From positions 1,638,749-1,702,748 of the forward strand of contig NW_003314263.1 in assembly GCF_000143415.4 (NCBI RefSeq): a stretch of DNA of 64,000 nucleotides. Reading direction: 5' to 3'. Made by a program: the position numbers and the translations under genes. The notes under the pieces were generated by a model, which had not been told where the DNA came from, did no database searches, and saw only the letters and a program-made list of their open reading frames with translations. Shown piece after piece: positions 1-55,809 of this stretch (positions within the stretch are counted from its first letter, which is position 1; every line of letters begins with the position of its first letter). This DNA is from Selaginella moellendorffii. Lineage: Eukaryota; Plantae; Lycopodiophyta.

Positions 1-284
1 CGTTAGGGGTTAGTTTCTCTAACCCAATTTTGCGTTGATGTCAAGTAAAAAATCATGCAACCTTATCCATTATGAATTCAGTAAGTGAGCCAGGTTTATG
101 CATTGCATCTATGTATACCATGATGTATCCTTAACAGGCTGTGGCTCGCCCGTTAACTTGATCCAACTGTTGGCAACCGTCGGATTGAGTCAGGTTCTCT
201 GCCAGAACGTGGTTGACAACTGCCAAGTTCTCTAGAACCCAGCTGCCAACTACCAGGTTTTGGAGAACCAGGCTACTAGCTGCC

Positions 285-797: not shown

Positions 798-829
<32 letters not shown>

Positions 830-4900: not shown

Positions 4901-6039
4901 TTGTGGCTAAATAAGGACAAGGTCCTTGTTTGGGTTAAGGAATAAGGTTCCTAGTTCAAAGTGTTGATTTGAACTATTGATAATGGTGTGGCTTGGTCAA
5001 GGTGACCAAGTGGGAAAAGCACCTTAGGGAAATGAGCTATGTCATTGCGATGGCATAGTGTGTCCAAGGAAAGTAGTCTCTAAAGAGACCCATGAGAGGG
5101 TCACAAAGTTGGGCCGAGGATAGAGCCCACAGCAGAAGATGCTAAAAGAGACTTACTAGGGGTGAACACCCTAGTCTTGGCAAAGCGGAGCCTTTGCTAT
5201 GGAATCAAAAGAATACCTCAAGGAGGGAGGTAGAGATTCGATGTTGCTTGGTGCAACAATCAATGGATAGGAGCAAAAGATGAGTGGCCAAGATAGGGCC
5301 GTGGAATCCCTGGGAAGGAATCCAAGTGACAAAGTTAGGCGAGGAACACTAATGTGTTGGACGCTAACAAATTGCGGGAAAGGAAGTGTGTTTCCAAGGA
5401 TGGATTTCGAATTGCTCCGATTTGGCGAAAGTGGAAGCTCCAAGGGAGGGAGTGGTAAAGTAGCCAAATGATAAGGCGATGGACAACCCTAGCACAAAGT
5501 GTGATAAATGGAACTTAGTGCCCAAGGTGGCACGAAATAGAAGAGAGGATGATAGTGCCCTCAAGGAATGAACTTCCTAGGATAGGGAAGTGGAGTTGCA
5601 CAATCTGTGCAATGCAAGGTGTTGGAGACACCTAGGAAATTGACTTCCAAAAGTCAAAAGAGTAAAAGTTCCAAGGTGCAAACATTCAATAGATGGAAAT
5701 TGAGACTACTCAAGAAGGAGTAGTGGGATTGACTTAGAGAAGGGTCTCTAAGAGGTTGAGCAAGAACTAAACCAATAAAAGGAGAGAACCACTACATGTG
5801 GTCCAATCAATCTCTAAGTTGGAGAGACTACCCTCCTTAGAGGATAGGCAAGGCATGGTGAGCCTTTGGTGTCAAACCATTGAGGCATATGCAAAAGGCA
5901 TGGTGAGCCTTCAATGTCAAACCATTGACAAATATTGGCTAGGTGCCAAGGATGGAAATGGTAACACATGCGAGTGTTACTTTACAAAATGGTTTACCGT
6001 TCGATGAGGACATCGAACTTCGTCTATGGGTGGTGGAGT

Positions 6040-18363: not shown

Positions 18364-19029
18364 TTTTCCCTCCCCAGTAAACCCTAATTAGGGTTCTTAC
18401 GATTGTCACTCTGTTTTTACGCATTTAGAATATTCCCGTAGCTTTGGGAATGGATTTTGCCCCTCTCGGAGAACAGAGTTTTCCCGTTGCTAGTGCTTTG
18501 ATCGCGCTCCAGTGGTGTAGGTCTTTCCTTTCTTACTGTGACGCTGGAATAGGAGGGAATGTGGCGCGGAGAACAGGGGAAGAGCTATCGATCGCATTGA
18601 TTCTTCGAGCGAGGGCAACAGCTCGAGGGTAGCACGACGCTCCCATTCGATCGATCGCTGGGTAGGGTTTGAGGCGGGTGCGCTTGCTCTTTTCTTCCCT
18701 CGGTTTCTTGAATTAGGGCTTGGGCAAAGCATCACGCTCTGCGCGAGCAGGGCTTTAGGCGGCAAGGTGCTGGGCGCGCTAGGGTTTAGATCGGCCAGGA
18801 ATACCAACAGTTCTTACCGAAATCCGGTAAGCTCTCGATCGATTCAGCTGCGCTGCGAAATATTCCGCTCCAGGATTGATCCGCGCGCTAACATCCTCTG
18901 TTTTTCCCTGTTCTTGCAGGAGAGAGGAGCAAGAAGAGGGCGAAATCTCTCTCTCTCTTGCTCGTAAGCAGGGCATGCTCTGTTTGGCATCGATCAATGC
19001 GGTGAAATTTGGGAAAGATTCTGAGTGAC

Positions 19030-22000: not shown

Positions 22001-22926
22001 CTGAAGACGATGGTCAGCATGGTGCAGGATCGACGCTCTGTTTCTCAAACAGCGTATGGCATGACGTGCCTATCTCGTTTTCTCCAACTTTTCATTCATC
22101 GTACATGGATGAGAAGCCAAAGGCATGGCCGACGGCTCACAGGACGCCATTGAAGATAGGAATCCCAAAGAGGAAAAGGACTCAAATAGCTTCATCTTTG
22201 GAGGCTAGCGACGAAGAGAAACAGCTAACAGACGAGGACCTGGAAGAAGATTATGATGAAGAAGAAGAAGCAGAGGAAGACGAGGAGGAGCAGAATTATA
22301 GCAATGTGTCAGCTTCGTCTGTTGAGGATGACGAACGCGCTGTGGATGAAGCCGCAGAGTATGGTCTGGAATCCAGAGCTAAGAGGACCAAGCGCAAGAG
22401 CTGGAAAGCTCAAGCAGCAGAAGAACAAGAGAAAGCTCCTAGACGAGGTACGTTTCCTATGCGTGAAGCAACCAACATGAAACTTTTGTCCCTTGCAGGA
22501 GGAGCGAAGAAGGCCTCGACGTCGACAAAAAGGCCTGGCAGCGAGGCGACGAAGCGCAAGCTTGCTCCCGGCATGGTGCACTCTCATGGACTACACACTT
22601 GCGACTTCGATGGATGCACGATGAGCTTCCGAACAGCGAGCGAGCTAGCTCTGCACAAGCGCAACATCTGCACCATCAAGGAGTGCTCCAAGCGCCTCTG
22701 CTCGCACAGCTACCTGATGCAGCACTACCGCGTCCATGCCGACGACCGGCCTCTCAAGTGTCCCTGGAAAGGCTGCAAGAAGACGTTCAAATGGTCCTGG
22801 GCCCGAACGGAGCACATCCGAGTCCACACCGGCGAGAGGCCCTACGCCTGCACCGAGTGCGGCAAGAGCTACAGGTTTGTCTCGGATTTCAGTCGCCACA
22901 AGCGTACAACGGGTCACAGTACGTGA
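19030..22926 (+). CDS. REF6/ELF6-type JmjN-JmjC protein with four C-terminal C2H2 fingers; Fe-binding His residues substituted
   Basis: JmjN APEYRPSEADFVDPI...FGICKIVPP; JmjC LYIAMLFS, PKTWY, VQNPGEY; fingers CPWKGCKKTFKWSWARTEHIRVHTGERPY and FVSDFSRHKRTTGH. Confidence 0.93.
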
Positions 22927-25883: not shown

Positions 25884-26454
25884 CTGGAAACCTGACGACG
25901 AAGCTGGAAATTTGTACATTCATTCTTTTTGTTTTCTCATAACTTGACTGTAAATTCATCTCTAGAGCTTAGATTTGTTTTGATTTTCTTGAATTCTGTT
26001 AAGGCTTGATGAGAGACCAAACTTTGAAACCTTTTCACCATGAGAAACCCCATAAGATTGTCATTTTTATGTCTTTCCGGTGAGCATAAATGTGCCCTTC
26101 TAGTATCTCAAGCTTCTTGGCACACAACCTGCAGATGTCAAACGGTGTATTTGAATCTGGAAGCAATACACCCAAACTTGTTGTCAAGAAAATACTACTC
26201 AGATAATTCTTTTGTCCCAGGCTGGTTGTTATGGCTAATGCTGAGGTGGTCTGAAATTCCTTTGCTTTAAAATATGTTTTGGCGTTGTGCGTGATGTGTG
26301 GGCTGCTCTTCTAGACAAGTGTCTTGTTTGATAAGATGCAAGCTACAGAAATGGTTGAGGTGGAATGCCACGCAATTTGTTTGCTACTGATAATTTTGTC
26401 TAGTGGTTGCAATTTGAATTTATATACGGCAGAGAATCTGAGACTTTTTGAGTA

Positions 26455-26898
26455 ATGGCTTCTTCCAGTTCTTCCCATTGGTGCTGTCTCCTGCTCTTCA
26501 CTGTGATCCTCACTCAATCTACTGCTTCTCTCAAGAATCAAAATGCTTGTTCCAATCAAAATGCTTTGGTCCTACCCAATCACCATCACAAGCACCAGCT
26601 CCTTCACCTTCACCTTCACCATCACCACCACCACCCTCCCCTCCACCTCCACCACCACCCCTACCCCCACCACCTTCACCTTCACCCCCACCTCCACCAC
26701 CACCCCTACCCCCACCACCTTCACCCTCACCCCCACCACCGCCACCACCACCACCATCGCCACTTTGCCCACCATGTGGGTATGGCCAGAAATGCTGCTG
26801 TATGTTTCCATCCTGCTTGTTTTTGTTCAAATGCTGCCCCGTCACAACCGTTTGTGGATATGGCCCCCATTGCTAAAATGTATTCGCTTAAGATATAA
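26455..26898 (+). CDS. Secreted low-complexity protein: the ATG frame is signal peptide plus His-rich; the overlapping frame is Pro-rich plus Cys-rich (possible frameshifted gene)
   Basis: MASSSSSHWCCLLLFTVILTQSTA signal-like segment; (CCA/CAC)n repeats; frame 26448-26876 has no ATG and encodes SPPPP repeats and CCCMFPSCLFLFKCCP. Confidence 0.55.
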   Translation: MASSSSSHWCCLLLFTVILTQSTASLKNQNACSNQNALVLPNHHHKHQLLHLHLHHHHHHPPLHLHHHPYPHHLHLHPHLHHHPYPHHLHPHPHHRHHHHHRHFAHHVGMARNAAVCFHPACFCSNAAPSQPFVDMAPIAKMYSLKI

Positions 26899-38997: not shown

Positions 38998-39094
38998 ATA
39001 TTTTTGGAAGATATTTTTGATGCATGCAGGCGTTCCCCCTTTATAAACAGATGCAAAACCTTGTATTGTCATTTCTGGGTTCAGTTCAAGGAGA

Positions 39095-39699
39095 ATGGCC
39101 AAAGTGTTTCTTCTTTCCGCCCTCCTCGTTGGCCTGCTGCTCTTTGTAGCCGATGCATCTCGCAACACTCAGCGTACGTGTCCGCATTCTTGCAAATCGT
39201 TTGTCTAACCTGCAGATATTGTTCTAGTGACTGACAAGGAGAGCGATGTGACTTACATCGTTGAGGGGTCTCGTGAAGGTAGTAACGAGGCTGCTGGTCT
39301 CAATGTTGTCATCCCCTCCAAACACGGTAACATAGATCATGTTATGATCCCTCTTGTTGTGATCATGAGCTGTCCTTGTGATATTTATTATGCGCCACTA
39401 CTTCTCCGTTTGTTAATGCTGCAGGCCTCCAAGATAAGTACTGCTGCCTGAAGGATGGTTTGGGATCATGTGTTCAGGAGTGCGACTCCAAGATCAAATA
39501 CTACTGCTGCCTCAAGACTGGACTCGGCGGCTGCAAGCAACTCTGCGAGACCAATGTCGAATACTTCTGCTGCCTCAAGAACCCTTTTGGTACCTGCTTT
39601 CAGCTGTGCGACTCGTCCAAGGAACACTACTGCTGCAAGAAGAACGTTTCTGGTTCCTGCGTTGGAATGTGCCCCAAAACGGTGAACCTGATGAAGTGA
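39095..39699 (+). CDS. Secreted cysteine-rich repeat protein, copy A (150 aa)
   Basis: Exons 39095-39173, 39228-39326, 39425-39699 in frame: signal peptide, acidic linker, four CC-x7-C-x3-C repeats; TATA near 39042. Confidence 0.88.
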
Positions 39700-39899
39700 T
39701 CTGCGTTTGATGACAAGTGTAAGCAACATCTAAAAGCTTATAATTGCTGATACTCTCTACAACTTTTATATTTTTACAAGATTTTCGCTATACTTTTACT
39801 TTTTTCAACTGAGTTTGTAAGGTAGCTTGCCATGCCACTGCTGCTGGATCGTCCATTGGGAGACAAGTAGCTTTGAACAAGTCCTCATTCTAGTTCACG

Positions 39900-42039
39900 T
39901 CGCTCAGCACCAGGTCGCCATCGCTGGTAAAGCTGAGGTACGCTCCTTCCGGGACGGTTTTCGCGTAGCTCGCCATGTCAGCGCTGCTAGATAGTAGAGA
40001 TTGAAACTCTCCTTGTCGTCCATGGCGTAGAAGACTGACAAGTAGAACTGGAACTCTTGGGAGGTTTGCTCCCAGCAGCTAAGTAGGAGGCAGGAAGGGG
40101 TGCTAAAGCCAAGGCTAATTCGAAATATCTGGAGTGGATTCGAGAGTGGAGCTTGGAGGAAGATGGCGCTTCCAGTGACATTGGAAGCTTTGTGTGGTCG
40201 ACCAACACAGGAGGATCTGGAGCGCAAGTCTTGGCCCTCGAGAGCTCTGGAAATCTCGTCATCCGGAGCAAAATTGGAGATTTCCTGTGGCAGAGCTTTG
40301 ATCATCCCTGTGATGCTGTGCTCCCTGGGATGAAGTTAGTAGCCAGCATCTCTAAGGAGAACAAAGAGCCAGGGTACTTCTCACTCGAGGTAGCCGCTTC
40401 TCGGTCGCTTTGAACTCCAGTATGTTGAGAATCTTTTGGAGAGGTCTGGAGCTCCGATGAGGAAGAAGAAGAGATATCATTTCTCTTCCTCGTCAATAGC
40501 AGCTTGGAAATCCACGGGACGAAAGGTGTTATGTGGTCCACTCCAACGATCGGTGGTGTTACTGATCAATCAGGGCACCAGTTCCTCAAGATCTACTCGA
40601 ATGGAGAGCCCCGGTTTACCTCGAGATCATTCAGCACCGGCAACAGCACGAAGAGCATCAACTTAAACCCGCTCTTCTTTGGGAAAAGCTCGCTTACTCG
40701 AACCTGTGGGATCTCGTTCGAGACAGCTGAAGGATACCTCTGCATCGTTCACGAAGTACGTTTCTTCCGGGGACAAGGAGGGATGCAAGCACCTGGAAGA
40801 ACCTGCGAGAACTCGCAACATCACTACATGCTCGAAGCCACAGTACGATACTTCTACAAACCTCTAGATTTATCCAGTGCGCTCCACAACGTCACTCCAG
40901 CAGCGTGCATGGCCCTGTGTATCAAAAACTGTTCCTGCAAAGGGGTGCTAAGCCAGGAGAAACAACTACCTGTTTCCAGATGACCGAAGTTTTTTCTCTG
41001 AACAAAACTCGCAACGTCGTCGATGAAGCTTTGCTGTTTTCGATCAAGTTGTACCAAGCTGGAGATCTTCCAAAGCTCTCAACACCAGGCAACTCACAAA
41101 GTCGCCAAGTAGCAAAAACAGGCAAAGCCAGCCATCGTCGCGGTTTTCTCTGTGGCGACCATGGCTATAATCATCATCGCAATGGTGACCTGGAAGAAAC
41201 AGATAAACTCGTACCTCAAACACTACAAACCATCGTTGGTGCGCGTCTTTAATTACCCGGAGCTCCTCACTGCAACCAAAGCCTTCAGTGCGAAAATCGC
41301 AAGTGGAGGCGTTGGCACGGTTTTCGAAGGGATACTCTCCGTTGCCGTGAAACGGCTGGAGAGCTTCTCGAGCCAAGGATACAAACAGTTCAAGGCGGAG
41401 GTGAGAGCGATCGGAATCATCCATCACAAGAACCTTGTAAGACTCAAAGGCTTTTTTTCCCAGGAATCACACTACTTCCTGGTTTACGAGTACGTAGCAA
41501 ACGGGTACAAGCCGCGGGAAGACACGAGATTCAAGATAGTCGAGGAGATTGCTCGAGGGATGTGCTACCTCCACGAGGAATGCAGCACTAGAGTTCTGCA
41601 CTTGGACATCAAGCCGCAAAACCTACTCCTGGACGAAAACTTTGGTGTCAAGATAGCAGAGTTTGGACTGTCGAGGATGGTAGAGCAAGGAGATCTAAGC
41701 GATGTCATGACAATGATCTGAGGAACACCCGGATACATGGCTCCGGAATGGTTGCAGATGCGAGTGAGAGACAAACTGGACATCTACAGCTTTGGGATCC
41801 TTGTGCTGGAAGTGGCGCTTTCCATACCTGTGTGTCTTGCGGGAGGAGCCCAAAGTTCCTGGCGGTTTGAGAAGCTTCGGTCTGGGAAGTTAATGGAGAT
41901 GTTAGAAGAGAAGAGGGCGCGGCAAGAAATGGAGGCTACCTCTAAGGCCGAGAAGCTGCTTCGCATTGGAGTGTGGTGCATCCAACCGGATTCTCAGCCA
42001 AATTGTGGGAATCCACTGACACTCATAGATTTTGTATGA
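39900..42039 (+). pseudogene. S-domain (B-lectin/PAN/kinase) receptor-like kinase pseudogene, copy 1
   Basis: VWSTNT...GNLVI...LWQSFDHPCDAVLPG, CMALCIKNCSC, TM segment, HLDIKPQNLLLD; frameshifts and in-frame TGA at 41719-41721. Confidence 0.9.
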
Positions 42040-42366
42040 GAGGCACCATTCTATCGAGATTTAGTGGCACCAAAGCAGCGCCCGCCCTGCAAGTGCCCTA
42101 AGATTCTTCGAGGATATTATTTATTATTTAGATCCAGGCTTAGTTTGTTATATTTTTGTTTAGTTAAGTAAAAATAAAATAGTTTAATTTTTATTTATTT
42201 ATAAATTATTTATTTTTTAAACGTAAAACCTTTGACAAGCGTTTGAGAGGAATGCCCAAATTTTTATTTCTTTTTAATTTCTATAATATTTCTAAAACAT
42301 TGTTACTCTTTAAATGTCATTTATGAAAATCCAAATTCTATATCAACCAGTTTTAAACATAGAATC

Positions 42367-43001
42367 ATGGGTTTTCTTTTAGACTTATTAAAGACGTAGG
42401 AAGAAAAGATAATTATTACTCAGGATTTTCACTTTCTAAAGTAGTGTTTTCAAAAAATGGTAAATGACAATATCATTATTAAATGCACAACCAAATAGTA
42501 GATAAAATATTTAGGCTTTGATTTACAAGTAGAATCTGGCTGATTTTGTTAGGGATGATTTTGTAAAATATTATATCAATGGACGGTTTAGCATATCGTA
42601 TCAGCTTGATTCAGATTATATTTTTCCAGATAAAATAAAACTTGCTTATTTCACCCTACAAAACCATATAAAAACGATTGCAATATTATAAGGTATGCGA
42701 CCACACCATTCTGTCTTTTCTACTTTCTGCAATCTTTAAATGGTTTATTCATGCTTTACATGCAACTGGACTGCAATCTACAAAGAGTATAATTGTTTGG
42801 AGCACTCACACAAATAGCTTTCTAAGGTTGCAAAAAGATGGAAATATGGTAATCTATGGTGAAAATTACACGGTTGTTTGTTCAGACAGCATTTACTGGA
42901 AAGACAAATGGATTACTAGTGCATTATGTGTTGATAACTCTGGACTTGTTGTAGTATACAACACTGTAGAGCAAACTTGTATATGGCAATCACCAAGATG
43001 A
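42367..43001 (+). pseudogene. AT-rich gene with C-terminal bulb-type (GNA-like) lectin, copy 1
   Basis: VWSTHT, LQKDGNMVIY; deletions relative to the other copies. Confidence 0.7.
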
Positions 43002-43019
43002 GAATTTAAAATCTAGCAT

Positions 43020-45989
43020 TCACTCTACACAAATATGAGATAGAAGGACATAAGTTGATGCTCCAGAAGCTCTTGCGATGGCGCTTGGAGCAGCCATGTT
43101 TCCAAGCCGATTATTGCCATGAGTTTTACAAGCTCCAAGCAGCGTCATGTAGGCAATGGAGCCCGGCTCGATTGGCATGCTATCGATCACCTCTTGGGCC
43201 TCGTCAAGCCGGCCAGTTCGCCCAAACAAATCGATCACACACATGAAATGCTCCAGGTTTGGAGCTATGTGATGATCGAGCACAAGAGACTGGAAACTAT
43301 ACTTACCACTCTCAAAGAGCCCGGCATGGCTACACGCAGAGAGAACACTGACAAACGTGACTTCGTCCGGATCAAGCCCCTCGAGCTTCATCCTCCAGAA
43401 GAGATCAAAAGTTTCCTCAAAATGCCCGTTGTTCGCATACACCGAGATGATTCCATTCCATGAAACCACGTCCTGCCTTGTCGTTGCCTCAAACGCCACC
43501 TTTGCCCCTCGAAGGTATCCACACCTCCCATAAAAGTTGACCACGGCATTGTTTGTCATCACATCGGATTGAAACCTAGAGTGATGGAGCTCACCATGCA
43601 CAAGCTTTCCCTTTTGGAGAGCGGTGATCCTCCCAAGGGCGTCAAGAACAGCCAAGAAACTCACCTTGTCCGCCTGGGTGCCTTCCAGATCCATTTGGTG
43701 GAAGAGCCGAGCAGCACTCTCGCATTCCCCGGCTTGGACGAAGATACAAATCAAGGTGTTCCACGAGACCGTGCTTGGCTCCTCCATTTTCTCAAAGATT
43801 TCCTTCGCTTTGTGGATATGCCCGGCTTGGGCATGCGCCACCATAGCTGTGTTGTGCGAGAAGCTGTCCCAGCAGGGCATCCTTTTCGTGAGAATCTCCA
43901 GAGCCTCGTCCACTCTCCCGTGCTGGATATAAGCCGCCGCGAGCGTGTTAAACGAGACCACGTCTGGAGAAGGAATGGTTTCCTCGAGGAAACTCGCGGC
44001 CTTGGCGAGATGCCCGTTTTGGGCATATGATCTTAGCAAAGAGTTCCACGAGACAGTGGATGGGTGCTCGATGCGATCAAACACTGCCTTGGATTCCTCC
44101 ACTCCCTTGCATTTTCCATAGCTCGCCACCAGTGAAGTCGCCACGGCGAGATCGGAGATCCAGCCAGTGTGATCCGCCGCTGCGTGAACTTGGCGGCAGT
44201 GGGAGAGGCTCGAGAGGCCCGAGCACGCATCGAGAGCTGCGAGGAACGTCGCGCGGTCGGGTGTTGTGTCGATCTGCCAGAACAGCGCGAGTGATTCCTC
44301 GCAGTGACCGAGCTGGGCATAGGCCGCGATGATCGAGCTCCACGAACTCGTGTCTCGCTGCTCCATCCGATCGAATACCCGCCTCGCGCTGGCGAGGTGG
44401 CCTCTCTGGAGATACGCGGTGATCAGCGCGTTGCATGCCGCGATAGTGATCTCTGCCGAGATCTCGAGCAAGAACAGTGCTTGATCGAAGTGTCCCTGCT
44501 GGGCTTGAGCTCTAGCGACGATGCTCCACGAGGAAAGATCTCTCCGGGGCATTGTCTTGAAAAGGAGCATCGCTTCGTCGAGGCATCCATTGTGAGCATA
44601 CGTCGCGATCATGGCGTTCCAGAGCTCTCTCCGCCGCTTCTTCTGCTCGAAGACGAGCTCGGCCCTCTCCACTGCACCGGATCTCCCGAACATCTTGATC
44701 AAGGAGCATGATACTCCGTGATCGCTACGCAAGGATCCGCAGGCTTGGCTCAAGTGGAAGATCCTCTCGCATCGATCAGGATCGCCAAGGCTGCCGCAGG
44801 CGTCGATGGCGATGATGTACGTGAGTTTGTTCTTGAGGACGTCCATTGAATCGAAAAGGTCTAGAGCTTCTAGCAGATGCCCAAGAAGGGCAAGTGCTGT
44901 GATCATCGCGTTCCAGAGAGTGGCGTCCTTGTGGCTTGTTTGATGAAATATCTCAAGCAACAAAACCATGTCACCTTTCGAAGCATAAGCTATGAGAAGT
45001 GATGTTCTTGAACGAAGATCGTGGGCTGGGAGTCTTTCATACAAATCTATGGACTCCAAAAAATGCCCTTTTAGGGCAAATGCTGAGAGTAGAGCGTTCC
45101 AGACAGCCAAATCTCTTTGTTTCATGCAATCAAAGAGATCCTTTGCATCCTGGAGCCGTTCATGGCGAGATGTGGCATCAATTATCGTCGTCCAGGAGAT
45201 CACATCAACGCAAGGCATTCGGTCGAAGAACTCTCGCGCTTTGCAAAGATTCCCTGATTGGGCATACGCGGAAAGCATGGCGTTCCAGCATATCGCATTC
45301 CTGCCAATGATCCGATCAAAGAAATGCTCCGCGCTCTCGGCCTCGCCAATCTTTCCATAAACCACAACGAGCGCCGTCCCGACAGCGATCTGGGTGTGAA
45401 TTCCCAGCTGGATTGCTTCCATGGCAATCGCCCTTGCCAGATCTCTATCCAGCTCTTCGATCCCGGCAATGGCATCGAGAACGCTCACGAAGCTGATGGA
45501 ATCCGGTGCCACGCCCTGGAGATCCAAGCCCCGGAAAAATCCCAGCGCCTCTCTGCAATGCCCATTCTGGGCATACGCCGCGATGATCGTGTTCCAGGAC
45601 ACAAGATCTCTCTCCGGCATGGAATCGAAGAGCTCCTGCGACCGCGAGAGATTCCCAGCGCCGGCGTACCCGCTAATCAGCGCATTCCAGGAGACCACAT
45701 CGCGATGAGCCATTCGCGTGAAAACGTCCCTGGCTCTGGCAAGATCCTCTGTCTGGGCAAATGCTCGAAGCAAGATCGTCCACGAGTAGACGTTGTGGCG
45801 GGCTGCGCCGCTGTGGAAGACGTTCTCGGCATCGCGCAGGCTGCCGCAGACGCTGTACATGTGAATGACAAGATTCGCGACGAATGTGTTGCGATCCAGG
45901 CCTGCCCTGGCGATCTGCGAGTGGAGAATCCGCGCCTCCGTGGGAGATCGGCATTTTCGGAGTAGTGCCGCCGCAGCATCTACGCGCAT
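43020..45989 (-). CDS. PLS-class pentatricopeptide repeat protein with truncated E domain (989 aa)
   Basis: Repeated DVVSWNAL...YAQNG motifs; TFVSVLSACSHAG, HFMCVIDLFGRTGRL, LLGACKTHG; ends YVLLSHICVE. Confidence 0.93.
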   Translation of the reverse strand: MRVDAAAALLRKCRSPTEARILHSQIARAGLDRNTFVANLVIHMYSVCGSLRDAENVFHSGAARHNVYSWTILLRAFAQTEDLARARDVFTRMAHRDVVSWNALISGYAGAGNLSRSQELFDSMPERDLVSWNTIIAAYAQNGHCREALGFFRGLDLQGVAPDSISFVSVLDAIAGIEELDRDLARAIAMEAIQLGIHTQIAVGTALVVVYGKIGEAESAEHFFDRIIGRNAICWNAMLSAYAQSGNLCKAREFFDRMPCVDVISWTTIIDATSRHERLQDAKDLFDCMKQRDLAVWNALLSAFALKGHFLESIDLYERLPAHDLRSRTSLLIAYASKGDMVLLLEIFHQTSHKDATLWNAMITALALLGHLLEALDLFDSMDVLKNKLTYIIAIDACGSLGDPDRCERIFHLSQACGSLRSDHGVSCSLIKMFGRSGAVERAELVFEQKKRRRELWNAMIATYAHNGCLDEAMLLFKTMPRRDLSSWSIVARAQAQQGHFDQALFLLEISAEITIAACNALITAYLQRGHLASARRVFDRMEQRDTSSWSSIIAAYAQLGHCEESLALFWQIDTTPDRATFLAALDACSGLSSLSHCRQVHAAADHTGWISDLAVATSLVASYGKCKGVEESKAVFDRIEHPSTVSWNSLLRSYAQNGHLAKAASFLEETIPSPDVVSFNTLAAAYIQHGRVDEALEILTKRMPCWDSFSHNTAMVAHAQAGHIHKAKEIFEKMEEPSTVSWNTLICIFVQAGECESAARLFHQMDLEGTQADKVSFLAVLDALGRITALQKGKLVHGELHHSRFQSDVMTNNAVVNFYGRCGYLRGAKVAFEATTRQDVVSWNGIISVYANNGHFEETFDLFWRMKLEGLDPDEVTFVSVLSACSHAGLFESGKYSFQSLVLDHHIAPNLEHFMCVIDLFGRTGRLDEAQEVIDSMPIEPGSIAYMTLLGACKTHGNNRLGNMAAPSAIARASGASTYVLLSHICVE

Positions 45990-46029
45990 AGAACCATAAT
46001 GCGTTTTAGGGTTCTAGAATATTTTCTTG

Positions 46030-46480
46030 GGCTGTGCTATGTTTCTTCGAATGCTGTCCTTTGTCAGTTTAAAAACTTAGATTGCTAACCCATTTATGAT
46101 CAATTTTTTGTTCTCGGGAGATAGATTCAGTTTTGATCTGATGTTCGAATTGAAGAACTGTCCAAGCACTGAGCTGAACCATCACACTTTCATTCACACT
46201 AGACATCCAGAATTGTCACATGGTTCACAGTTGAATCAGGTAGCTGAGGTTGACACACATTGTGCAAGCACAATTTCTCAATCTTGAGTATGAATTTGGC
46301 GTTTGGACAAGGATTTCTCCCTTTCCTTGAATCCTTCTACTTTGATTTTTTCACTAGCACTTGGGCACCACTAATTTTCAGGAAGTCTCAAGAGAGAAAT
46401 TCATTGTTTCCATTTAGATTCTTCTTCCAGCTTGGTTTTCTACTCAACACCAAATGCTTAGTGTGGATACCTCGGAGGGG
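46030..46480. repeat. Non-coding block upstream of the PPR gene, repeated inverted at ~59760-60515
   Basis: GCACTGAGCTGAACCATCACACTTTCATTCA and adjacent sequence recur as reverse complements near 60050 and 60375. Confidence 0.8.
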
Positions 46481-46931
46481 CAAGGTTGGCTTTTGAGGCA
46501 ACGACAGGGCAGGACGTGGTTTCATGGAATGGAATCATTGCGAACAACGGTCATTTTGATTAAACTTTTGATCTCTTCTGGAGGATGAAGCACGAGGGGC
46601 TTGATCCGGACGAAGTTACGATTGTCAGTTCTCTGTGCATGTAGCCACGCCCGGCTCTTCGAGAGTGGTAAGCATAGTTTCCATTTGCAGGTTATTGGAT
46701 TTAAGTGCTTAGGGTGTTCTCTAAAATAAACCATGTGAACTGTGAATTGGCCGGCTTGACGAGGTCCAAGAGGTGATCAATAGCATGCCAATCGAGCCGG
46801 GCTCCATTGCCTACAGGAGCTTGTAAAACTCATGGCAATAATCGGCTTGGAAACATGGCTGGTCCAAGCGCCATCGCAGAGCTTATGGAGCATCAACTTA
46901 TGTCCTTCTATCTCATATTTGTGTAGAGTGA
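46480..46931 (+). pseudogene. PPR 3'-end fragment
   Basis: Inverted copy of ~43020-43510 with indels. Confidence 0.85.
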
Positions 46932-46949
46932 ATACTAGATTTTAAATTC

Positions 46950-47612
46950 TCATATTGGTGATTGCCATATACAAGTTTGCTCTACAGTGTTGCATACTAT
47001 AACATGTCCAGAGTTATCAACACATAATGCACTAGTAATACATTTGTCTTTCCGGTAAATGCTGTACGACCAGACAACCATGTAATTTTCATCATAGATT
47101 ACCATATTTCCATCTTTTTGCAACCTTAGAAAGCATCCATTGCCTTTGTTATTTGTGTGAGTACTCCAAACAATTACACTCTTTGTATGTAAAACTAGAT
47201 TGCAGTCCAGTTGCATGTCAAGCATGAATAAACCATTTAGAGATTTCAGAAAGTTCCCATTTGATAATGTGGAAAAGACAGAATGGTGTGGTCCATTTCT
47301 TGCATACCTTATAAAATCGTTTTTATGTGGTTGTAAGTAAGCTTTACTTTATATGTGGAAAAATATAATCTGAATCAAGCTGATATGATATGGTAAATCG
47401 TCCATTGATATATTCTGCCAATTCAAATTTTACAAAATCATCCATAACAAAACCAACCATCATATCAAATCAGGAAAGGTATTCCATCTACTATTTGGTT
47501 GTGCATTTAAAAATGATATTGTCATATTTAAGGATTTAAATTTTTTCAAAAACACTGAGTAATAATTATCTTTTCTTCCTACTTCTTTAATAAGATCTTT
47601 AAGAAAAACCAT
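46950..47612 (-). pseudogene. AT-rich bulb-lectin gene, copy 2 (lectin domain still open)
   Basis: LSNGNFLKSLNGLFMLDMQLDCNLVLH...LQKDGNMVIY...IWQSPI; upstream part frameshifted. Confidence 0.75.
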
Positions 47613-48129
47613 GATTCTAAAGTGGTTTTCATAATTGGCATTTAAAGAACAACAATGTTTTAGTAATAATATTTATGTATTATAGATATTAAAAAGAAAA
47701 AATTAGGCAAATATTCCGTTTTAAACTTTTTGGTTTGCTTAAGCTGGTACTGGATATACCTAGAATATTCTAGAATATTCTACCATTTAACGGTTGTTAT
47801 TCATGTATTTGTAATTTATAAACATGTTTATAATTTATTAAATTTCTTTAAAACTTTCTAATATATTCTTTTTATTTTACCATCTAATGATTGATATGCA
47901 ATACTTAATCTTGTATTTATAAATTATAAACATGTTTATAATTATAAATTTTTATTTGGTCAATTGGATTAATAAGTACTATTAAGAAAATCAAGCATTG
48001 CTACATGCAACACGTAGCAAATTATTTATTTTACTTAACTAAACTAAAATAAATAAATTAAGCTAGACTAAACTAAACTTTATTAACTTCTTAAAATTCT
48101 CATTGCTCAAAGAATTTTAGGGCACTCTT

Positions 48130-48695
48130 GAGTCATTGCAGGGTGCCGCCTTGGATCCGGCTGGATGCACCACACTCCAATGCAAAGTAGCTTCTTGGCC
48201 TTAGAGGTAGCCTCCATTTCCTGCCGCACCTTCTTCCTCTTCTAACATCTCCATTAACTTCCCAGATCGAAGCTTCTCATGCCGCCAGGAACTTTGGGCT
48301 CCTCCCGCAAGACACACAGGTATGGAAAGCTTGTAGTCCGGTAGCCACTTCCAGCACAAGGCAAAGCTGTAGACGTCCAGTTTGTCACTCACTTTCATCT
48401 GCAACCATTCCGGAGCCTCATTGGCATGACATCGCTTAGATCTCCTTGCTCTACCATCCTCCACCTCGACAGTCCAACGTCTGCTATCTTGACACCAAAG
48501 TTCTCAGCCAGGAGTGTGTTTTGGGGATTGATAGCCAAGTGGAGGACTCTAGTGCTGCATTCCTCATGGAGGAAGCAAATTCCACGAGCAATCTCTCGAC
48601 TATCCTGAATCTCGTGTCCCAGTTGTGCTCTTCTCGCGACTTGTAGATCTACTTGTCTAGGGATCCGTACTTGTAAACCAGGAAGTGGTGTGATT
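48130..48695 (-). pseudogene. S-domain RLK kinase fragment
   Basis: LHEECSTRVLHL, APEWLQ; fused directly to a PPR copy at ~48700. Confidence 0.85.
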
Positions 48696-48699
48696 CCTG

Positions 48700-50880
48700 G
48701 GCATTGGGATTTTTCGGCGCTGGGATTTTTCCGGGGCTTGGATCTCGAGGGCGTGGCACCGGATTCCATCAGCTTCGTGAGCGTTCTCGATGCCATTGCC
48801 GGGATCGAGGAGCTGGATAGAGATCTGGCAAGGGCGATTGCCATGGAAGCAATCCAGCTGGGAATTCACACCCAGATCGCTGTCGGGACGGCGCTCGTTG
48901 TGGTTTATGGAAAGATTGGCGAGGCCGAGAGCGCGGAGCATTTCTTTGATCGGATCATTGGCAGGAATGCGATATGCTGGAACACCATGCTGTCCGCGTA
49001 TGCCCAATCAGGGAATCTTTGCAAAGCGCGAGAGTTCTTCGACCGAATGCCTTACGTTGATGTGATCTCCTGGACGACGATAATTGATGCCACATCTCGC
49101 CATGAACGGCCTCAGGAGGCAAAGGATCTCTTTGATTGCATGAAACAAAGAGATTTGGCTGTCTGGAACGCTCTACTTTCAGCATTTGCCAAAAAGGGGC
49201 ATGTTTTGGAGTCTATAGATTTGTATGAAAGACTCCCAGCCCACGATCTTCGTTCAAGAACATCACTGCTCATAGCTTATGCTTCGAAAGGTGACATGGT
49301 TTCGTTGCTTGAGATATTTCATGATAACATTTGATAATGATGACTAATACGCTCATAAGCATTTGTGAAAACTTTAAACCGTCTTTACAACCTTGATTAT
49401 CAGATTGACATCTCATTAGTCGATGGCATCTTTCATATTGTCTCTCTTGTGCATAAGGAGGAAAAACTTAAACCAATCATAGGTTATATTCGAGCCGTTC
49501 ATTAGCTATCTAATTATAAAATTATAGTCTCTAGCATATCCGTTAACAACATTTACTAATTAAAATTTAACGTTACTAATTTAGAGTTAGTCGTTAAACA
49601 TTTAATGTGGGCGTGACTAAACGCGCCAGAGGAAGTGAGGAGTGAAGAGAGGGGAGGAAGTGAGGAGTGAGCATGGCAAAGGGGCAACCACGTAAGAGAG
49701 GAGGGTGCTGTATTATGCATTTCTCCCGAGATCTTTCCTCGTGGAGCATCGTCGCTAGAGCTCAAGCCCAGCAGGGACACTTCGATCAAGCACTGTTCTT
49801 GCTCGAGATCTCGCCAGAGATCTCTATCGCGGCATGCAACGCGCTCCGCGTACCTCCAGAGAGGCCACCTCGCCAGCGCGAGGCGGGTATTCGATCGGAT
49901 GGAGCAGCGAGACACGAGTTCGTGGAGCTCGATCATCGCGGCCTATGCCCAGCTCGGTCACTGCGAGGAATCACTTGCGCTGTTCTGGCAGATCGACACA
50001 ACACCCGGCCGCGCGACGTTCCTCGCAGCTCTCGATGCGTGCTCGGGCCTCTCGAGCCTCTCCCACTGCCGCCAAGTTCACGCAGCGGCGGATCACACTG
50101 GCTGGATCTCCGATCTCGCCGTGGCGACTTCACTGGTGGCGAGCTATGGAAAATGCAAGGGAGTGGAGGAATCCAAGGCAGTGTTTGATCGCATCGAGCA
50201 CCCATCCACTGTCTCGTGGAACTCTTTGCTAAGATCATATGCCCAAAACGGGCATCTCGCCAAGGCCGCGAGTTTCCTCGAGGAAACCATTCCTTCTCCA
50301 GACGTGGTCTCGTTTAACACGCTCGCGGCGGCTTATATCCAGCACGGGAGAGTGAACGAGGCTCTGGAGATTCTCACGAAAAGGATGCCCTGCTGGGACA
50401 GCTTCTCGCACAACACAGCTATGGTGGCGCATGCCCAAGCCGGGCATATCCACAAAGTGAAGGAAGTCTTTGAGAAAATGGAGGAGCCAAGCACGGTCTC
50501 GTGGAACACCTTGATTTGTATCTTCGTCCAAGCCGGGGAATGCGAGAGTGCTGCTCGGCTCTTTCACCAAATGGATCTGGAAGGCACCCAAGCGGACAAG
50601 GTGAGTTTCTTGGCTGTTCTTGACGCCCTTGGGAGGATCACCGCTCTCCAAAAGGGAAAGCTTGTGCATGGTGAGCTCCATCACTCTAGGTTTCAATCCG
50701 ACGTGATGACAAACAATGCCGTCGTCAACTTTTATGGGAGGTGTGGATGCCTTCGAGGGGCAAAGGTGGCGTTTGAGGCAACGACAAGGCAGGACGTGGT
50801 TTCATGGAATGGAATCATCTCGGTGTATGCGAACAATGGTCATTTTGAGGAGACTTTTGATCTCTTCTGGAGGATGAAGG
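48700..50880 (+). pseudogene. Near-identical inverted partial PPR copy, interrupted at ~49325-49725
   Basis: ORFs 48690-49334 and 49899-50966 are almost identical to internal parts of the 989-aa PPR; both ends are missing. Confidence 0.9.
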
Positions 50881-51174
50881 ATTTCTTGTTCAAGCTCCCT
50901 AAGAATACTTTAACTCTGGTCATGCAATCTTGGGTCGTGGGCCGAATGGGATCGCGGCAACATTGATGGTTCATGCTGGATGGATAACACTAACAAGTTT
51001 CATTCAGCGTAGATTTCCATCAGCCTAGTAGTGACATTCCCTTCATTTCTGAATAGTAGCTAATTAGCTTAAGCATGGACGTCCCACGCGATGCATGCAG
51101 GCATTGCCCAGCAGCAGCGCATATAAACCGATGCAAGCTTGAAATTGTAGCTCTCAAGTTTCAGTTCAAGAAAA

Positions 51175-51759
51175 ATGGCGAAATTGCTTGTTCTTTCCTC
51201 CCTCCTCTTCGGCCTGCTGCTCTTGGCGGCCGATGCATCTCAGCGTACGTGCGAACTTCTGCATTGCAATTTCAAGATTCTTGCTCTCTAATCTGTGGAA
51301 TCCATGTGTAGCGGTTGACAAGGAGAGCACCAGTGAGAATTACAATGTCATTGTCGAGGGACCTCGTGAAGGCAGCGAGGCTGGCCCTGGTCTCAACAAC
51401 GTTGTCACCCAGGAGCCCCCTGGAAGCACGGTATGATCAGGAGCTTTTGATTATGCGCCACTGTTTCTCCGTTTGTTAATGCTGTAGGCCTCCAAGATAC
51501 ATACTGCTGCCTGAAGGATGGTTTCGGATCATGTCTTCAGGAGTGCGACTCGGGCGTCAAGTACTACTGCTGCCTCAAGAATGGAGTCGGCAGCTGCCTG
51601 CAACTCTGCGACCCCAAAGTCAATTACTTCTGCTGCCTCAAGAATGCATTTCGCAGCTGTTTGCAGCTGTGCGACTTGTCCAAGAAACACTACTGCTGCA
51701 AGACGAACGTTTCTGGTTCCTGCGTTGGACTGTGCCCCAAAACGGTGAATCTGATGTGA
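51175..51759 (+). pseudogene. Cysteine-rich repeat protein copy B; apparent 1-nt frameshift in exon 2
   Basis: Exons 51175-51244, 51312-51430 (119 nt, versus 99 and 102 in paralogs), 51488-51759; C5 run at 51416-51420; exon 3 keeps all 16 Cys. Confidence 0.7.
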
Positions 51760-51864
51760 TTTTGCTTGATGAACATGTGTGAATGCATTCAAAGAATAAA
51801 TTGCTTCTGTGACAACCTTTCACTTTAACAAAACACCATTTGCCATCAGTGTAAAACAATATAA

Positions 51865-54800
51865 TCATCTTCTGGGCTTGGCGCCACCATTGCCTTTGCT
51901 CGCAGGCTTGCCACCTTTGCCTCTGTTCGCAGGCTTGCCACGTTTGCCTTTGCTCGCACCTTTGCCACCCGTCTTACCACCTTTTCCACCGCCTTTGCCA
52001 GGCTTGCCACTTCCTCGGGATCGTGAGTCCTTCTTCATGCGACGATCCACCACAAGCTTCCCTTTGCCACCCTTGACCCTCACGCCCTTCTTCGCCACAA
52101 CGAGCTCCCGCTTGGGACGCTTATTGGTCGTCGCCGCCGCTTTCTTGTAAACCTTGTCCATCATCCTGTTCTTGGACTTGTTCGAGATGTCCGGCTGATC
52201 GGCAATCGCCGCCGCTCTGCTTCGTGCTTGCTCCATTTTCTTCATCACCCTCCGCTTCTTGCGAGCCTTGGCCTCAGCAACCTTCTTCACGGGCCTGGCG
52301 TCTATCGCTCTAAACTGCGCCCTCATCGCCTGGACCTCTTCCTTGGTGAATGGCTTCTGAATCTTGCAGTGCCGCTTCTCGTCGTCCGCGAACCATTCCG
52401 GGAGCCCCTCGTCGTCGAACATGTACTTGTTGTAGGCGTCGTCGATGATCCTGTCTCTGTCCTTCTTCCGCAGCATCTTCTTGGCGTAAGTGAGGATCTC
52501 TGCCTTGGCGTCGCTGTCGTAGTCCTCCTCTTCGTCCGAGGAAGAGTCGGACGAACCACTCGGCTCGGCTGCTACAACCTCAAAGTCTTCCCGTGCTCTC
52601 TTGAGCTTTCCTGGCGCAACCGTGACATCGCTCGGAGGAGCGTCCTTGGCAGTCTTGTCCTTGTTGGTATCCGTCTCCGGGGTTTGATCTAAACCGGCGA
52701 AGATGTCTTGACTGAACCATTGCTGTGCAATCTGTTCCTTCGAGAGCTTGGCCTTGGGAAGCGACACGACCAGAGGATTGGCCTCCTCCTCCTCCTCTTC
52801 TTCTACTTCGTTTTCTTCTTCCTCAGAAGCATTCTCTTCCACGTCCTCCTAAGGATATTGTCAGCTGCTTGCAAGTTCTAGCACTTTCATTTGGCTTACC
52901 TCCCACAGCTTTTCGTCTCCTGCGTTAGCCATTCTTGCGCGTTTCCGCCGTGCAGTGTTGCTTTCAGTCTTGCTCCGGTAGCGTTCGTATGCACGATCGA
53001 GGAAAGATTCCAGCTCGTCGTTGTATCTGCGAGAGATTACGTTAACACTTCAAGGCGTAGTTCTTACCTTTCGCGCTCGACGTCAGAATCCACATCATTG
53101 TCTTCGTCATCCTTCCGCTCCATGTCCTGCTTACTCGTTTCATCCTTCACATTGTCATCGCTGTCCAACATGTCGTCATCCGCATCTTCCACCCGATCCA
53201 AGCTTTTCTTCGCCTGGAAAAGTGTCCAACATGAGCTCCTAGGCACAGACGAGAAAGCGGACAAACAAACCTTGATTGAGCCCAAAGAGAACAGATCCCG
53301 CTCGCCATAAGTGTCTCCCAAGACATCGACTTGCATCCCTGTTCTATTTCGTGCGTTTAGCTGCAGTGTTGTGGCCCATCAACATACACAACAACAAAAG
53401 ATAGACAAACAATATGTACCTTCTGTTTACGCTTGGCAGCCTTCTTCTTCGCCTGCTTGCTTTTCGAATCCATTAGAGACTTGAGCTCCTCCATTTTCTT
53501 TAGCATATCCTCGTCTTCATCTTCTTTTTCGTCGTCATCCTTTTCAGCAGCCTTATCACCCTCTGTTTCCTCCGAAGCTGACGTTTTCGAAAGAGCTTTT
53601 CGTACATGCAGGCACCACCTGAGAGAACCAAATGAGCATGAAAGACAACAGCCACGAGAAGTAGAACCTACTTCAAAAGTTGCTTGAATTCTTTCTTCCC
53701 CAGAACTCTAAGGTCTTCGCATAATGCTTTTATCTACAAGAAAAAAAGTCCTCCAAATCAAAACAAGCAAACGAGGATTAGATATGAACGTACCTCGTCA
53801 GTTGTTTCAGCGTGGTCTTTGATTGGCGAACTTTTCGGATCCTCAAACGAAATAGACGTGATGCTACCAAGAAGCTCTAGAGGTTTTTCGGACCAGACGA
53901 AGTCTGCTGCCGTGCAGTCTTTACGAAAAGTAGTGTTTGCGTCATCGTATCTGCAGAAAATAAAAAACATAAAACCAAGAGTCTATTTGACGTGAGAACC
54001 CACCCCTCGCGGTGACGTTTCTGTTTACTACTACGAAGAACGTCGATCACCTACACAATTTACTCGGCTTTAGCGCAAGCACCTTGTTTACAATAACAAA
54101 ACCCACCTTTGGGGGCTGAGGAATCTCTTCAAATAAAAAGCGAGGGTCCAAGTTACGCGGATCGATTTTCACGGGTGCCAGATACTTGAGACCAACCACG
54201 TATATTTCAGCTGATGTCGAACGACTTGCTATGGGTTTCGTGACTTCCACCTTGGCAAACAGCTACCAAACGATACAAGAGGCAATGAAATATCACTCAA
54301 AAAACCATGACAAACATACCTGTTCAAATGCATACTTCAGCGCGTTATAATCTTGGGATCGAAAAACCTGCAAGAAAAACCAATTTTGGGAATCAGAGAA
54401 GAAGGAAAAATTCAAAAATGGAGGAAGAAGAAGAATTCTTCGTACCTTGGTGACAAACGTTCCTTTGGGAGCCAGAAACTTGGTAGCCAACTTCAAAGAA
54501 TCCAGGACAAGAGACGACTGCGTCATGGCTTCTTTGGCCCAGGCACCTCCCACATTGGGGGAGCCATCGTGGAGCACAACATCGACCATCCTCAACCCGT
54601 TCTGGTCGAGAATCTTCCCAATATCCGACGCGCATTTTGGAGTGGTGATATCGCCCTGGAGCGACAGCGCCCCTCTCACGGGACGAATCGGCACCAGATC
54701 CACGCCGATTACCACAGACCTCACGGGCATCTTCTCCACGGCCACCTGCATCCATCCCCCGGGCGCCGCGCACAAATCCAGCACCGAGTGCGCCGAGCTG

Positions 54801-54922
54801 AGGAAGCCATACTTGCGATCGAGCTGCACGAGCTTGAATGCGGCACGGGAGCGGTAGCCCTGCTCCTTGGCGAGGTAGTAGAAGCGATCCAAGCGGTGCT
54901 TCCCCTTCTTCGCCTTCCCCAT
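51865..54922 (-). CDS. SPB1: Pre-rRNA 2'-O-ribose methyltransferase SPB1/FTSJ3
   Basis: [56 protein letters not shown]; C-terminal [34 protein letters not shown]. Confidence 0.96.
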
Positions 54923-55087
54923 CCCTGCAAGACCTTCGAGGAACCCTAAAACCCCACTTTAGGTTTACAAGAAATATTCTGGTGGATATTCGAGCGCTTT
55001 TAAAATGAGTCAGTCGACATTGGATACAAGCAAATCACATTCATAAAGTCTTCCCTTCTTGGGTGATATGCTAGTTATTTATCTTAA

Positions 55088-55130
55088 GCATGCATCGCGT
55101 GGGGATGGGGACGCCCACGCGATGCATGCA
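55088..55130. promoter_or_regulatory. Palindromic element with two RY-like CATGCA cores upstream of copy C
   Basis: 16-bp perfect inverted repeat 55088-55103/55114-55129, ~15 nt before TATAAA. Confidence 0.55.
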
Positions 55131-55205
55131 GGCATTCCTCCTTTATAAACAGATGCAAAACCTTGTATTGTCAAGCATAATATTTCTGATTTCAGTTCAA
55201 GGAGA

Positions 55206-55809
55206 ATGGCCAAAGTTCTTCTTTCCGCCCTCCTCTTTGGCCTGCTGCTCTTCGTAGTGGATGCATCTCGCAACACTCAGCGTACGTGCAAACACTTCCG
55301 CATTCTTGCAAATTGTTTCTCTAACCTGTAGAATGGCTCTAGTGACTGGCAGGGAGAGCGATGTGACTTACGTCATCGATGGGCCTCGTGAAGGTAACCA
55401 GGCTGCTGATCTCAATGTTATCATCCAGAACACCCCGAAACACGGTAACTTAAATCACGTTATGATCTTCCTTGTTGTGATCATGAGCTGTCCTTGTGAC
55501 ATTGATTATGCCACTGCTTTTCCGCTTTTGATGCTTGCAGGCCTCCAAGATACATACTGCTGCCTGAGGAACGGCTTTGGATGTGTTCAGGAGTGCGACT
55601 CCAACATCAAATACTACTGCTGCCTGAAGAATGGATTCGGATGCCAACAGTTCTGCGAGGAAAACGTTAATTATTTCTGCTGCCTCAAGAATGGATTTGG
55701 CAGCTGCCAGCAGCTCTGCGACTCGTCCAAGGAACACTACTGCTGCAAAAAGAACGGCTTTGGGAGCTGCACTGGAATGTGCCCCAAAACCGTGGACCTG
55801 ATGAAGTGA
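55206..55809 (+). CDS. Secreted cysteine-rich repeat protein, copy C (148 aa)
   Basis: Exons 55206-55281, 55343-55444, 55541-55809 in frame; four CCxxNGFG(S)CxxxC repeats. Confidence 0.9.

What the first reader, a model, noticed from the sequence alone, without database searches (positions are those of the whole stretch)
39095..55809. Unrecognised family of secreted four-repeat cysteine-rich proteins (three copies)
Seen: three paralogs (39095, 51175, 55206) share phase-1 introns separating signal peptide, acidic pro-like linker and a mature region of four ~21-aa repeats [YF]CCxKxGxGxCxQxC with 16 invariant Cys. Inter-Cys loops vary (DGLGS, TGLGG, NPFGT, NAFRS, NGFG). The ORF track shows them only in pieces. 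The spacing does not match the defensin, thionin, hevein, snakin, LTP or Bowman-Birk patterns I know. Inference: a lineage-specific defence, inhibitor or signalling family, possibly processed into two-disulfide mini-peptides.
Basis: partly seen in the sequence, partly recalled or inferred. Interest (0 to 1): 0.85.

Follow-up and report, generated by a model that had tools for sequence, protein, structure and literature searches.

The report
Spikemoss secreted cysteine hairpin-repeat genes
Three neighbouring genes of the spikemoss Selaginella moellendorffii (two intact, one broken) belong to an unstudied family of small secreted proteins made of three or four cysteine-rich hairpin units that most likely fold together as one disulfide-locked domain, probably for defence, with no test of function yet.

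Summary
Real genes, mostly as described. The window is Selaginella moellendorffii. Copies A (39095) and C (55206) are intact three-exon genes with two phase-1 introns and match uncharacterised public proteins (A = XP_024543959.1). Copy B (51175) is one base short in exon 2, so its cysteine exon is out of frame; it is probably a pseudogene. Each unit is CC-x6/7-C-x3-C with an invariant 7-residue linker. About 17 relatives (3 or 4 units) were found, all in this species. There is no significant Pfam, PDB or fold match and no paper naming these genes. A-type sequence is abundant in probable RNA runs, and a paralog is spliced at intron 1. AlphaFold (pLDDT 90) makes every unit a beta-hairpin. First and last units swap hydrophobic for polar residues at opposite positions, as capping repeats do, and the mature exon is under purifying selection (omega about 0.34). 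This favours one folded domain over release of mini-peptides. The nearest motifs (Ib-AMP CC-x8-C-x3-C, the first half of 8-Cys thionins, the Bowman-Birk loop, Pin-II, granulin) all fail membership tests. Defence by binding a target is the best guess and is untested. The scan noted this family before at other loci of this genome.

The parts
39020..39047 (+). Copy A upstream: RY-like 9-mer (39020-39028) and TATA box (39042)
   Evidence: the 9-mer occurs only three times in the window, once before each copy, but is shared by descent and absent from other subfamilies
39095..39173 (+). Copy A exon 1: signal peptide
   Evidence: identical to XP_024543959.1 (P0012)
39174..39227 (+). Copy A intron 1 (54 nt, phase 1)
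39228..39326 (+). Copy A exon 2: mildly acidic pro-like spacer
39327..39424 (+). Copy A intron 2 (98 nt, phase 1)
39425..39699 (+). Copy A exon 3: four CC-x7-C-x3-C hairpin units (cores 39442-39483, 39505-39546, 39568-39609, 39631-39672), 16 Cys, stop
   Evidence: A-type alleles seen in deep RNA contigs
51091..51127 (+). Copy B upstream: RY-like 9-mer and TATA box (51122)
51175..51244 (+). Copy B exon 1: signal peptide
   Evidence: gene model SELMODRAFT_404296 (P0004)
51312..51430 (+). Copy B exon 2: pro-like spacer, one base short near 51420-51425, giving a phase-0 donor at 51431
51488..51759 (+). Copy B exon 3: four units (cores 51505-51546, 51568-51609, 51631-51672, 51694-51735), out of frame with exons 1-2; the public model works round this with a later acceptor (51540) and ends with 13 Cys
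55122..55149 (+). Copy C upstream: RY-like 9-mer and TATA box (55144)
55206..55281 (+). Copy C exon 1: signal peptide
   Evidence: identical to P0014 (SELMODRAFT_438190 sequence)
55282..55342 (+). Copy C intron 1 (61 nt, phase 1)
   Evidence: a paralog's RNA contig joins at the same acceptor, 55343
55343..55444 (+). Copy C exon 2: pro-like spacer
55445..55540 (+). Copy C intron 2 (96 nt, phase 1, no in-frame stop)
55541..55809 (+). Copy C exon 3: four units (cores 55558-55596, 55618-55656, 55678-55719, 55741-55782), 16 Cys, stop

Best explanation
A and C encode prepro-proteins for the secretory pathway. The signal peptide (exon 1) is removed. The weakly constrained acidic spacer (exon 2) is removed or stays disordered. 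Exon 3 folds as one small, rigid, disulfide-locked domain of three or four beta-hairpins packed side by side, with specialised first and last units acting as caps. The conserved Lys-Asn-Gly-aromatic turns are displayed in register and bind an extracellular target, most likely from a microbe or herbivore (an enzyme or a glycan), so the protein acts as an abundant apoplastic defence protein rather than a membrane-lytic peptide. Shown: gene structure, family, purifying selection, capping pattern, presence in probable RNA. Predicted: hairpin fold. Inferred: secretion, pro-region removal, disulfide pattern, target and defence role. B is a frameshifted duplicate. I put about 0.7 on the single-domain part and about 0.5 on defence.
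For: AlphaFold on a three-unit window: pLDDT 90.4, pTM 0.70, six strands, two per unit. The residue after the CC pair is hydrophobic in 36/38 first and inner units but 0/15 last units; the residue before the fourth Cys is hydrophobic in 35/38 inner and last units but 0/15 first units; Tyr two before CC in 23/23 inner units. All 42 linkers are exactly 7 residues and as constrained as the rest (pN 0.12, pS 0.24). 43 of 44 units are closest to the same-position unit of another gene, none to a unit of the same gene. Omega 0.34 for exon 3 against 0.81 for exon 2. Ten of ten in-frame gene models tested have two phase-1 introns. Family contigs reach depth 10^3-10^4 against about 70-100 for the neighbouring Spb1 gene in two runs (contig depth is a poor measure of expression). 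Small size, secretion signal, many disulfides, tandem expansion with gains, losses and pseudogenes are the usual profile of plant defence peptides (PMC4695807).
Against: No function was tested. The model comes from a shallow, partly self-shifted alignment and gave no coordinates, so the disulfide pattern is unknown; the four-unit model reached only pLDDT 62. Paralogs are related, so the capping counts are not independent events. Each protein has exactly 4n Cys with no end correction, which also fits self-contained units. No excess of non-synonymous change was seen, unlike many arms-race defence genes. No structural relative suggests a target.
Confidence: 0.5

Rival explanations
1. A multi-core precursor like that of the Impatiens Ib-AMPs: a protease (for example an asparaginyl endopeptidase cutting after the Asp or Asn in the linkers) releases each unit as a two-disulfide peptide of about 14-20 residues.
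For: The unit CC-x6/7-C-x3-C is one or two residues short of the Ib-AMP motif CC-x8-C-x3-C. Cys number is always four per unit and whole units are gained and lost. Asp or Glu follows the fourth Cys in every non-terminal unit.
Against: Ib-AMP cores carry 5-6 Arg and are separated by 16-35 residue acidic spacers; here cores are -1 to +2 and linkers are 7 residues, part of which form the next strand. Capping and position-specific conservation make little sense for freed peptides. No conserved dibasic site (5 of 15 proteins).
Confidence: 0.15
2. A multi-headed canonical serine-protease inhibitor. Either the CII-CIII loop presents Lys as P1 as in Bowman-Birk loops, or the C-x-Q-x-C stretch acts as a Pin-II-type reactive loop. 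This is a specific version of the defence reading.
For: Lys or Arg sits two residues after the second Cys in 54/59 units, the P1 slot of the nine-residue Bowman-Birk loop; 7-loop units have the same ring size (loop definition in PMC7760496). Weak Pfam hits to Prot_inhib_II, best E 0.11, 5 of 25 rows. Non-solanaceous Pin-II loops often have Gln at P1 (PMC8188708) and read C-x3-C-x7-C with Tyr before the last Cys.
Against: The Bowman-Birk motif (Thr, Ser, Pro-Pro) is absent from all 15 proteins and the Pin-II spacing is not met. Half the units have a 6-residue loop. The C-x3-C stretch is modelled as a strand. No structural match to either inhibitor. The Pin-II genes reported for this species are a different family.
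Confidence: 0.15
3. A non-defence extracellular protein: a cell-wall, spore-wall or surface scaffold, a sulfur-rich storage protein, or a developmental ligand, using the same single-domain fold.
For: Near-neutral charge (A +3, C +1), purifying rather than diversifying selection, apparently high and variable abundance, and an RY-like element before the TATA box in this subfamily.
Against: Rapid duplication and loss of copies is more typical of defence families. Very high abundance argues against a signalling ligand. The RY-like element is missing from other subfamilies.
Confidence: 0.2

Closest known systems
Impatiens balsamina Ib-AMP1-4 and their multi-peptide precursor
   Same: Signal peptide, then repeated four-Cys units of about 20 aa with CC and C-x3-C (PMC10136942, PMC4695807).
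   Different: Loop of 6-7 not 8; near-neutral not Arg-rich; 7-residue conserved linkers not 16-35 residue acidic spacers; predicted beta-hairpin whereas Ib-AMP1 has no regular secondary structure; no sequence hit.
Granulin fold (stack of disulfide-linked beta-hairpins)
   Same: Repeated CC pairs and a predicted series of short beta-hairpins in one small secreted domain. UniProt's automatic name for several members is 'Granulins domain-containing protein'.
   Different: No CC-xn-CC ladder, no single-Cys ends, no Pfam Granulin hit even at E 10, no structural match to granulins in the PDB searches.
8-Cys (class 1) thionins
   Same: The first half of a thionin reads CC-x7-C-x3-C, the same spacing as a 7-loop unit (PMC8279376); both have an acidic pro-region.
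   Different: Thionins are helical there, pair these Cys with a different second half, and have a C-terminal acidic domain holding the introns; here the acidic part is N-terminal and the unit repeats.
Bowman-Birk inhibitors and potato type II (Pin-II) inhibitors
   Same: Small disulfide-rich repeat proteins; nine-residue Cys ring with a basic residue at the P1 slot; a C-x-Q-x-C...Tyr-x-x-Cys stretch like non-solanaceous Pin-II.
   Different: Defining loop residues and Cys spacings are not met; only sub-threshold Pfam scores; the Selaginella Pin-II genes are a separate family.

Membership tests
Ib-AMP | Cys motif CC-x8-C-x3-C | tested here: not met
   0 of 15 proteins; loops are 6 or 7
Ib-AMP | Highly basic cores (5-6 Arg) | tested here: not met
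   core net charge -1 to +2
Ib-AMP | Acidic spacers of 16-35 residues between cores | tested here: not met
   42 of 42 linkers are 7 residues
Ib-AMP | Disulfides I-III, II-IV and proteolytic release of single units | not testable with these tools
   needs peptidomics and disulfide mapping
Granulin | 12-Cys ladder with consecutive CC pairs; Pfam Granulin | tested here: not met
   no CC-x4-9-CC in any member; no Pfam hit at E<=10
Granulin | Stack of beta-hairpins cross-linked by disulfides | tested here: inconclusive
   hairpins predicted, capping suggests stacking, but no fold match and no coordinates for disulfides
8-Cys thionin | Full motif CC-x7-C-x3-C-x8-10-C-x3-C-x-C-x6-8-C and helical fold | tested here: not met
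   only the first half matches; model is all-beta
8-Cys thionin | C-terminal acidic domain | tested here: not met
   acidic region lies before the Cys region; tail is 7-12 residues
Bowman-Birk inhibitor | Loop C-T-P1-S-x-P-P-x-C | tested here: not met
   0 of 15; only ring size and a basic P1-slot residue agree
Bowman-Birk inhibitor | Identity with the Selaginella BBI-like proteins of James et al. 2017 | not testable with these tools
   paper not held
Pin-II (MEROPS I20) | 50-55 aa domain, eight Cys with C-x3-C-x7/8-C-x10-14-C-x1/2-CC spacing; PF02428 above cut-off | tested here: not met
   spacing absent; best 13.2 bits for the first row against cut-off 22.3, best E 0.11
Pin-II (MEROPS I20) | Protease inhibition through the C-x3-C loop | not testable with these tools
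   needs an assay
Hevein-like | C-C-S-x-x-G-aromatic-C-G chitin-binding motif | tested here: not met
   0 of 15; no Pfam hit
Alpha-hairpinin | C-x3-C-x9-14-C-x3-C without intervening Cys, helical | tested here: not met
   0 of 15; model is beta
RECK CC domain | Six-Cys helical domain, PF23332 above cut-off | tested here: not met
   13.7 bits against cut-off 27, only the CC-x7-C-x3-C part aligns; model has no helix

The most novel reading that the evidence does not exclude
A new disulfide-rich repeat fold in plants: a capped, length-variable stack of 20-residue CC-x6/7-C-x3-C beta-hairpins, unrelated to any solved structure, used by a lycophyte as a multivalent defence scaffold with a new target or mode of action.
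Probability: 0.3. Interest if true: 0.7.

Novelty: new variant of a known kind. Interest (0 to 1): 0.45.

Why it matters
Cysteine-rich defence and signalling proteins of seed-free vascular plants are poorly catalogued. This is an expressed, expanded family with a Cys pattern outside the described plant classes and a confident predicted fold without a match. If the single-domain reading holds, it is a small, modular, probably very stable scaffold. It also shows that a CC...C-x3-C repeat need not be a multi-peptide precursor. The value is moderate: the genes are already in public annotation as uncharacterised, lineage-specific CRP families are common in plants, and no function is shown.

Tried and rejected
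Pfam scans of each exon and of 25 three-unit windows: nothing significant. PDB sequence searches, single and profile: nothing. Three homolog searches and one index-free search of 1.84 billion representatives: only S. moellendorffii; three other hits (P0026-P0028) lack the motif and are repeat artefacts. Metagenome scan: none. ESM Atlas by features: none, twice; by shape with the weaker model, TM below 0.4. Fold searches with the confident model: best Z 2.5 (gyrase C-terminal pinwheel), no Foldseek hit in PDB or viral libraries. Literature searches by gene id: none. The automatic 'Granulins domain' name was rejected as unsupported. The Selaginella Pin-II proteins in PMC4189545 are another family. 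The Cys-rich tail at 26790-26873 is unrelated. Assembly error as the cause of B's frameshift is unlikely because a second copy shares it. Deep RNA contigs over B's last exon carry A-type letters, so they do not show that B is expressed.
Full report
Observation. The three loci exist at the stated starts. A six-frame scan finds twelve CC-x6/7-C-x3-C units in the window, four in each locus; shuffled windows give 0.17. Gene models: A 39095-39173, 39228-39326, 39425-39699; B 51175-51244, 51312-51430, 51488-51759; C 55206-55281, 55343-55444, 55541-55809. A and C have two phase-1 GT-AG introns and encode 150 and 148 aa with 16 Cys. B does not: its second donor is phase 0 and the cysteine exon falls out of frame. 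Intact B-type paralogs elsewhere on the scaffold have one more base near the end of exon 2. An inverted, 98.8% identical copy of the whole B-Spb1-C block lies just beyond the window; its B twin has the same lesion plus a shortened first linker. B is therefore most likely a pseudogene, and the public model SELMODRAFT_404296, which uses a later acceptor and ends with 13 Cys, looks like a predictor's way round the break.

Identity. The window is Selaginella moellendorffii. A is identical to XP_024543959.1 and C to the SELMODRAFT_438190 sequence. Searches with exon 3, with a family profile, with a three-unit profile and against all 50% representatives returned about 17 distinct relatives with three or four units on at least six scaffolds, all from this species. 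A metagenome scan found none. Other lycophyte genomes may be missing from these collections, so 'species-specific' is not proven. All ten in-frame gene models I rebuilt from DNA, across three subfamilies, have two phase-1 introns separating signal, spacer and cysteine exon. In the window the copies sit in a mosaic of duplicated blocks with Spb1 methyltransferase, PPR and receptor-kinase genes and fragments; these neighbours are passengers of segmental duplication, not partners. No paper in the library names these genes.

Expression. Twenty runs hold words of locus A, nineteen of them 0.54-0.76 of the words; by my arithmetic a spliced transcript would hold about 0.7. The runs are only guessed to be RNA, but three of them show the neighbouring Spb1 gene with ten introns removed. 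In those runs family contigs reach depth 10^3-10^4 in two studies against about 70-100 for Spb1; the tool warns that contig depth measures expression poorly. The deep contigs over B's last exon carry the letters of copy A at 51704 and 51730, and loose ends at 55216 and 55711 are also A-type, so A or a near-identical allele is transcribed. One contig joins exon 1 to the acceptor at 55343; its letters fit the paralog P0001, so it shows splicing of intron 1 in the family, not in C itself. Nothing covers exons 1-2 of B. Intron 2 splicing was not seen directly.

Anatomy of the unit. Across 59 units all four Cys are invariant, Lys or Arg is second after the CC pair in 54, Asn third in 53, Gly sixth in 55, and the linker from the fourth Cys to the next CC is 7 residues in 42 of 42 cases. 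Cores are near neutral (-1 to +2). AlphaFold on the four-unit region was weak (pLDDT 62). On a three-unit window with an alignment of all three-unit windows it was confident (pLDDT 90.4, pTM 0.70): each unit is a two-stranded hairpin with the variable loop as its turn. No solved or predicted structure matched, though small disulfide-rich folds score poorly in such searches.

One domain or many peptides. The units are not interchangeable cassettes: 43 of 44 are closest to the same-position unit of another gene and none to a unit of their own gene. The residue after CC is hydrophobic in 36 of 38 first and inner units and in 0 of 15 last units, while the residue before the fourth Cys is hydrophobic in 35 of 38 inner and last units and in 0 of 15 first units. 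This is what is expected if these two positions pack between neighbouring units and the end units expose a polar face, as capping repeats do (inference; paralogs are not independent, but the pattern holds in all three subfamilies). Exon 3 is under purifying selection (omega 0.34; 0.24 in the second subfamily), linkers included, while the spacer exon is nearly neutral (0.81); no class of sites has pN above pS (pooled pairwise counts, not a site model). The disulfide pattern is open. In a regular hairpin the two adjacent Cys point to opposite faces while the C-x3-C pair shares a face, which favours one bond between units; but the strict count of four Cys per unit with no end correction also fits bonds within units.

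How it most likely works. Secreted; spacer removed or disordered; a rigid, disulfide-locked row of three or four hairpins whose Lys-Asn-Gly-aromatic turns bind an extracellular target. Defence is the most likely role because of the size, secretion signal, cysteine content, abundance and birth-and-death history, but the low charge argues against membrane lysis and nothing was assayed. A protease-inhibitor role is a testable special case: the basic residue sits where Bowman-Birk loops place P1, and a stretch resembles the Gln-type reactive loop of non-solanaceous Pin-II, yet neither family's defining residues or spacings are present.

Comparison with known families. The closest motif is that of the Impatiens Ib-AMPs, CC-x8-C-x3-C in a multi-peptide precursor, which differ in loop length, charge, spacer and structure. 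A 7-loop unit also equals the first half of 8-Cys thionins, and the predicted architecture recalls the granulin hairpin stack, the automatic name UniProt gives some members. All fail on defining features. The paper on Selaginella Bowman-Birk-like proteins could not be read, so overlap with its gene list was not checked beyond the absent loop motif.

Earlier notes of this scan describe the same family at other loci and at the inverted twin beyond the window.

Verdict. A real, expressed, uncharacterised family with an undescribed cysteine repeat and probably an unmatched small fold. Two intact copies and one broken copy here. New variant of a known kind (plant secreted cysteine-rich proteins); interest 0.45.

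Noticed in passing
window 51657-54935 (-): Spb1/FtsJ rRNA methyltransferase gene between B and C, spliced at ten introns in RNA contigs; its 3' end runs antisense over the last exon of copy B (to 51657 in one run), with several differences from the window.
   Followed up: partly
L001 9824-15165 and 17363-20585: An inverted, 98.8% identical copy of the B-Spb1-C block lies just beyond the window's end; it may be a recent duplication or an uncollapsed haplotype. RefSeq model XP_024544127.1 joins exon 1 of the B twin to exons 2-3 of the C twin across Spb1, probably a mis-join; another model (P0025) fuses part of C to a kinase remnant.
   Followed up: partly
window 26448-26898 (+): A signal-like start (26455) followed by a Pro-rich repeat and a Cys-rich tail with CCC and CC; no Pfam hit, unrelated to this family by profile comparison. 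Lies just upstream of a papain-type protease gene (27131, I29 propeptide).
   Followed up: partly
window 39020, 51091, 55122: An RY-like 9-mer occurs only three times in the window, each 20-30 bases before a family TATA box; absent or altered in other paralogs.
   Followed up: partly
window 37282-63653: Mosaic of direct and inverted duplications of PPR and S-domain-like receptor-kinase genes, many in pieces; one long PPR ORF of 989 aa at 43020-45989 (-).
   Followed up: no
window 276-1208 and 5939-6881: Two similar blocks of 6-, 12- and 23-base tandem repeats, probably the ends of one repeated or transposable element.
   Followed up: no
window 19009-22926 (+): JmjN/JmjC protein with C-terminal zinc fingers (REF6/ELF6-like); noted separately by the scan (s1-419205).
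   Followed up: no
P0018, P0019: Family members with a six-residue deletion that removes one Cys from the middle unit; possibly another broken copy.
   Followed up: no
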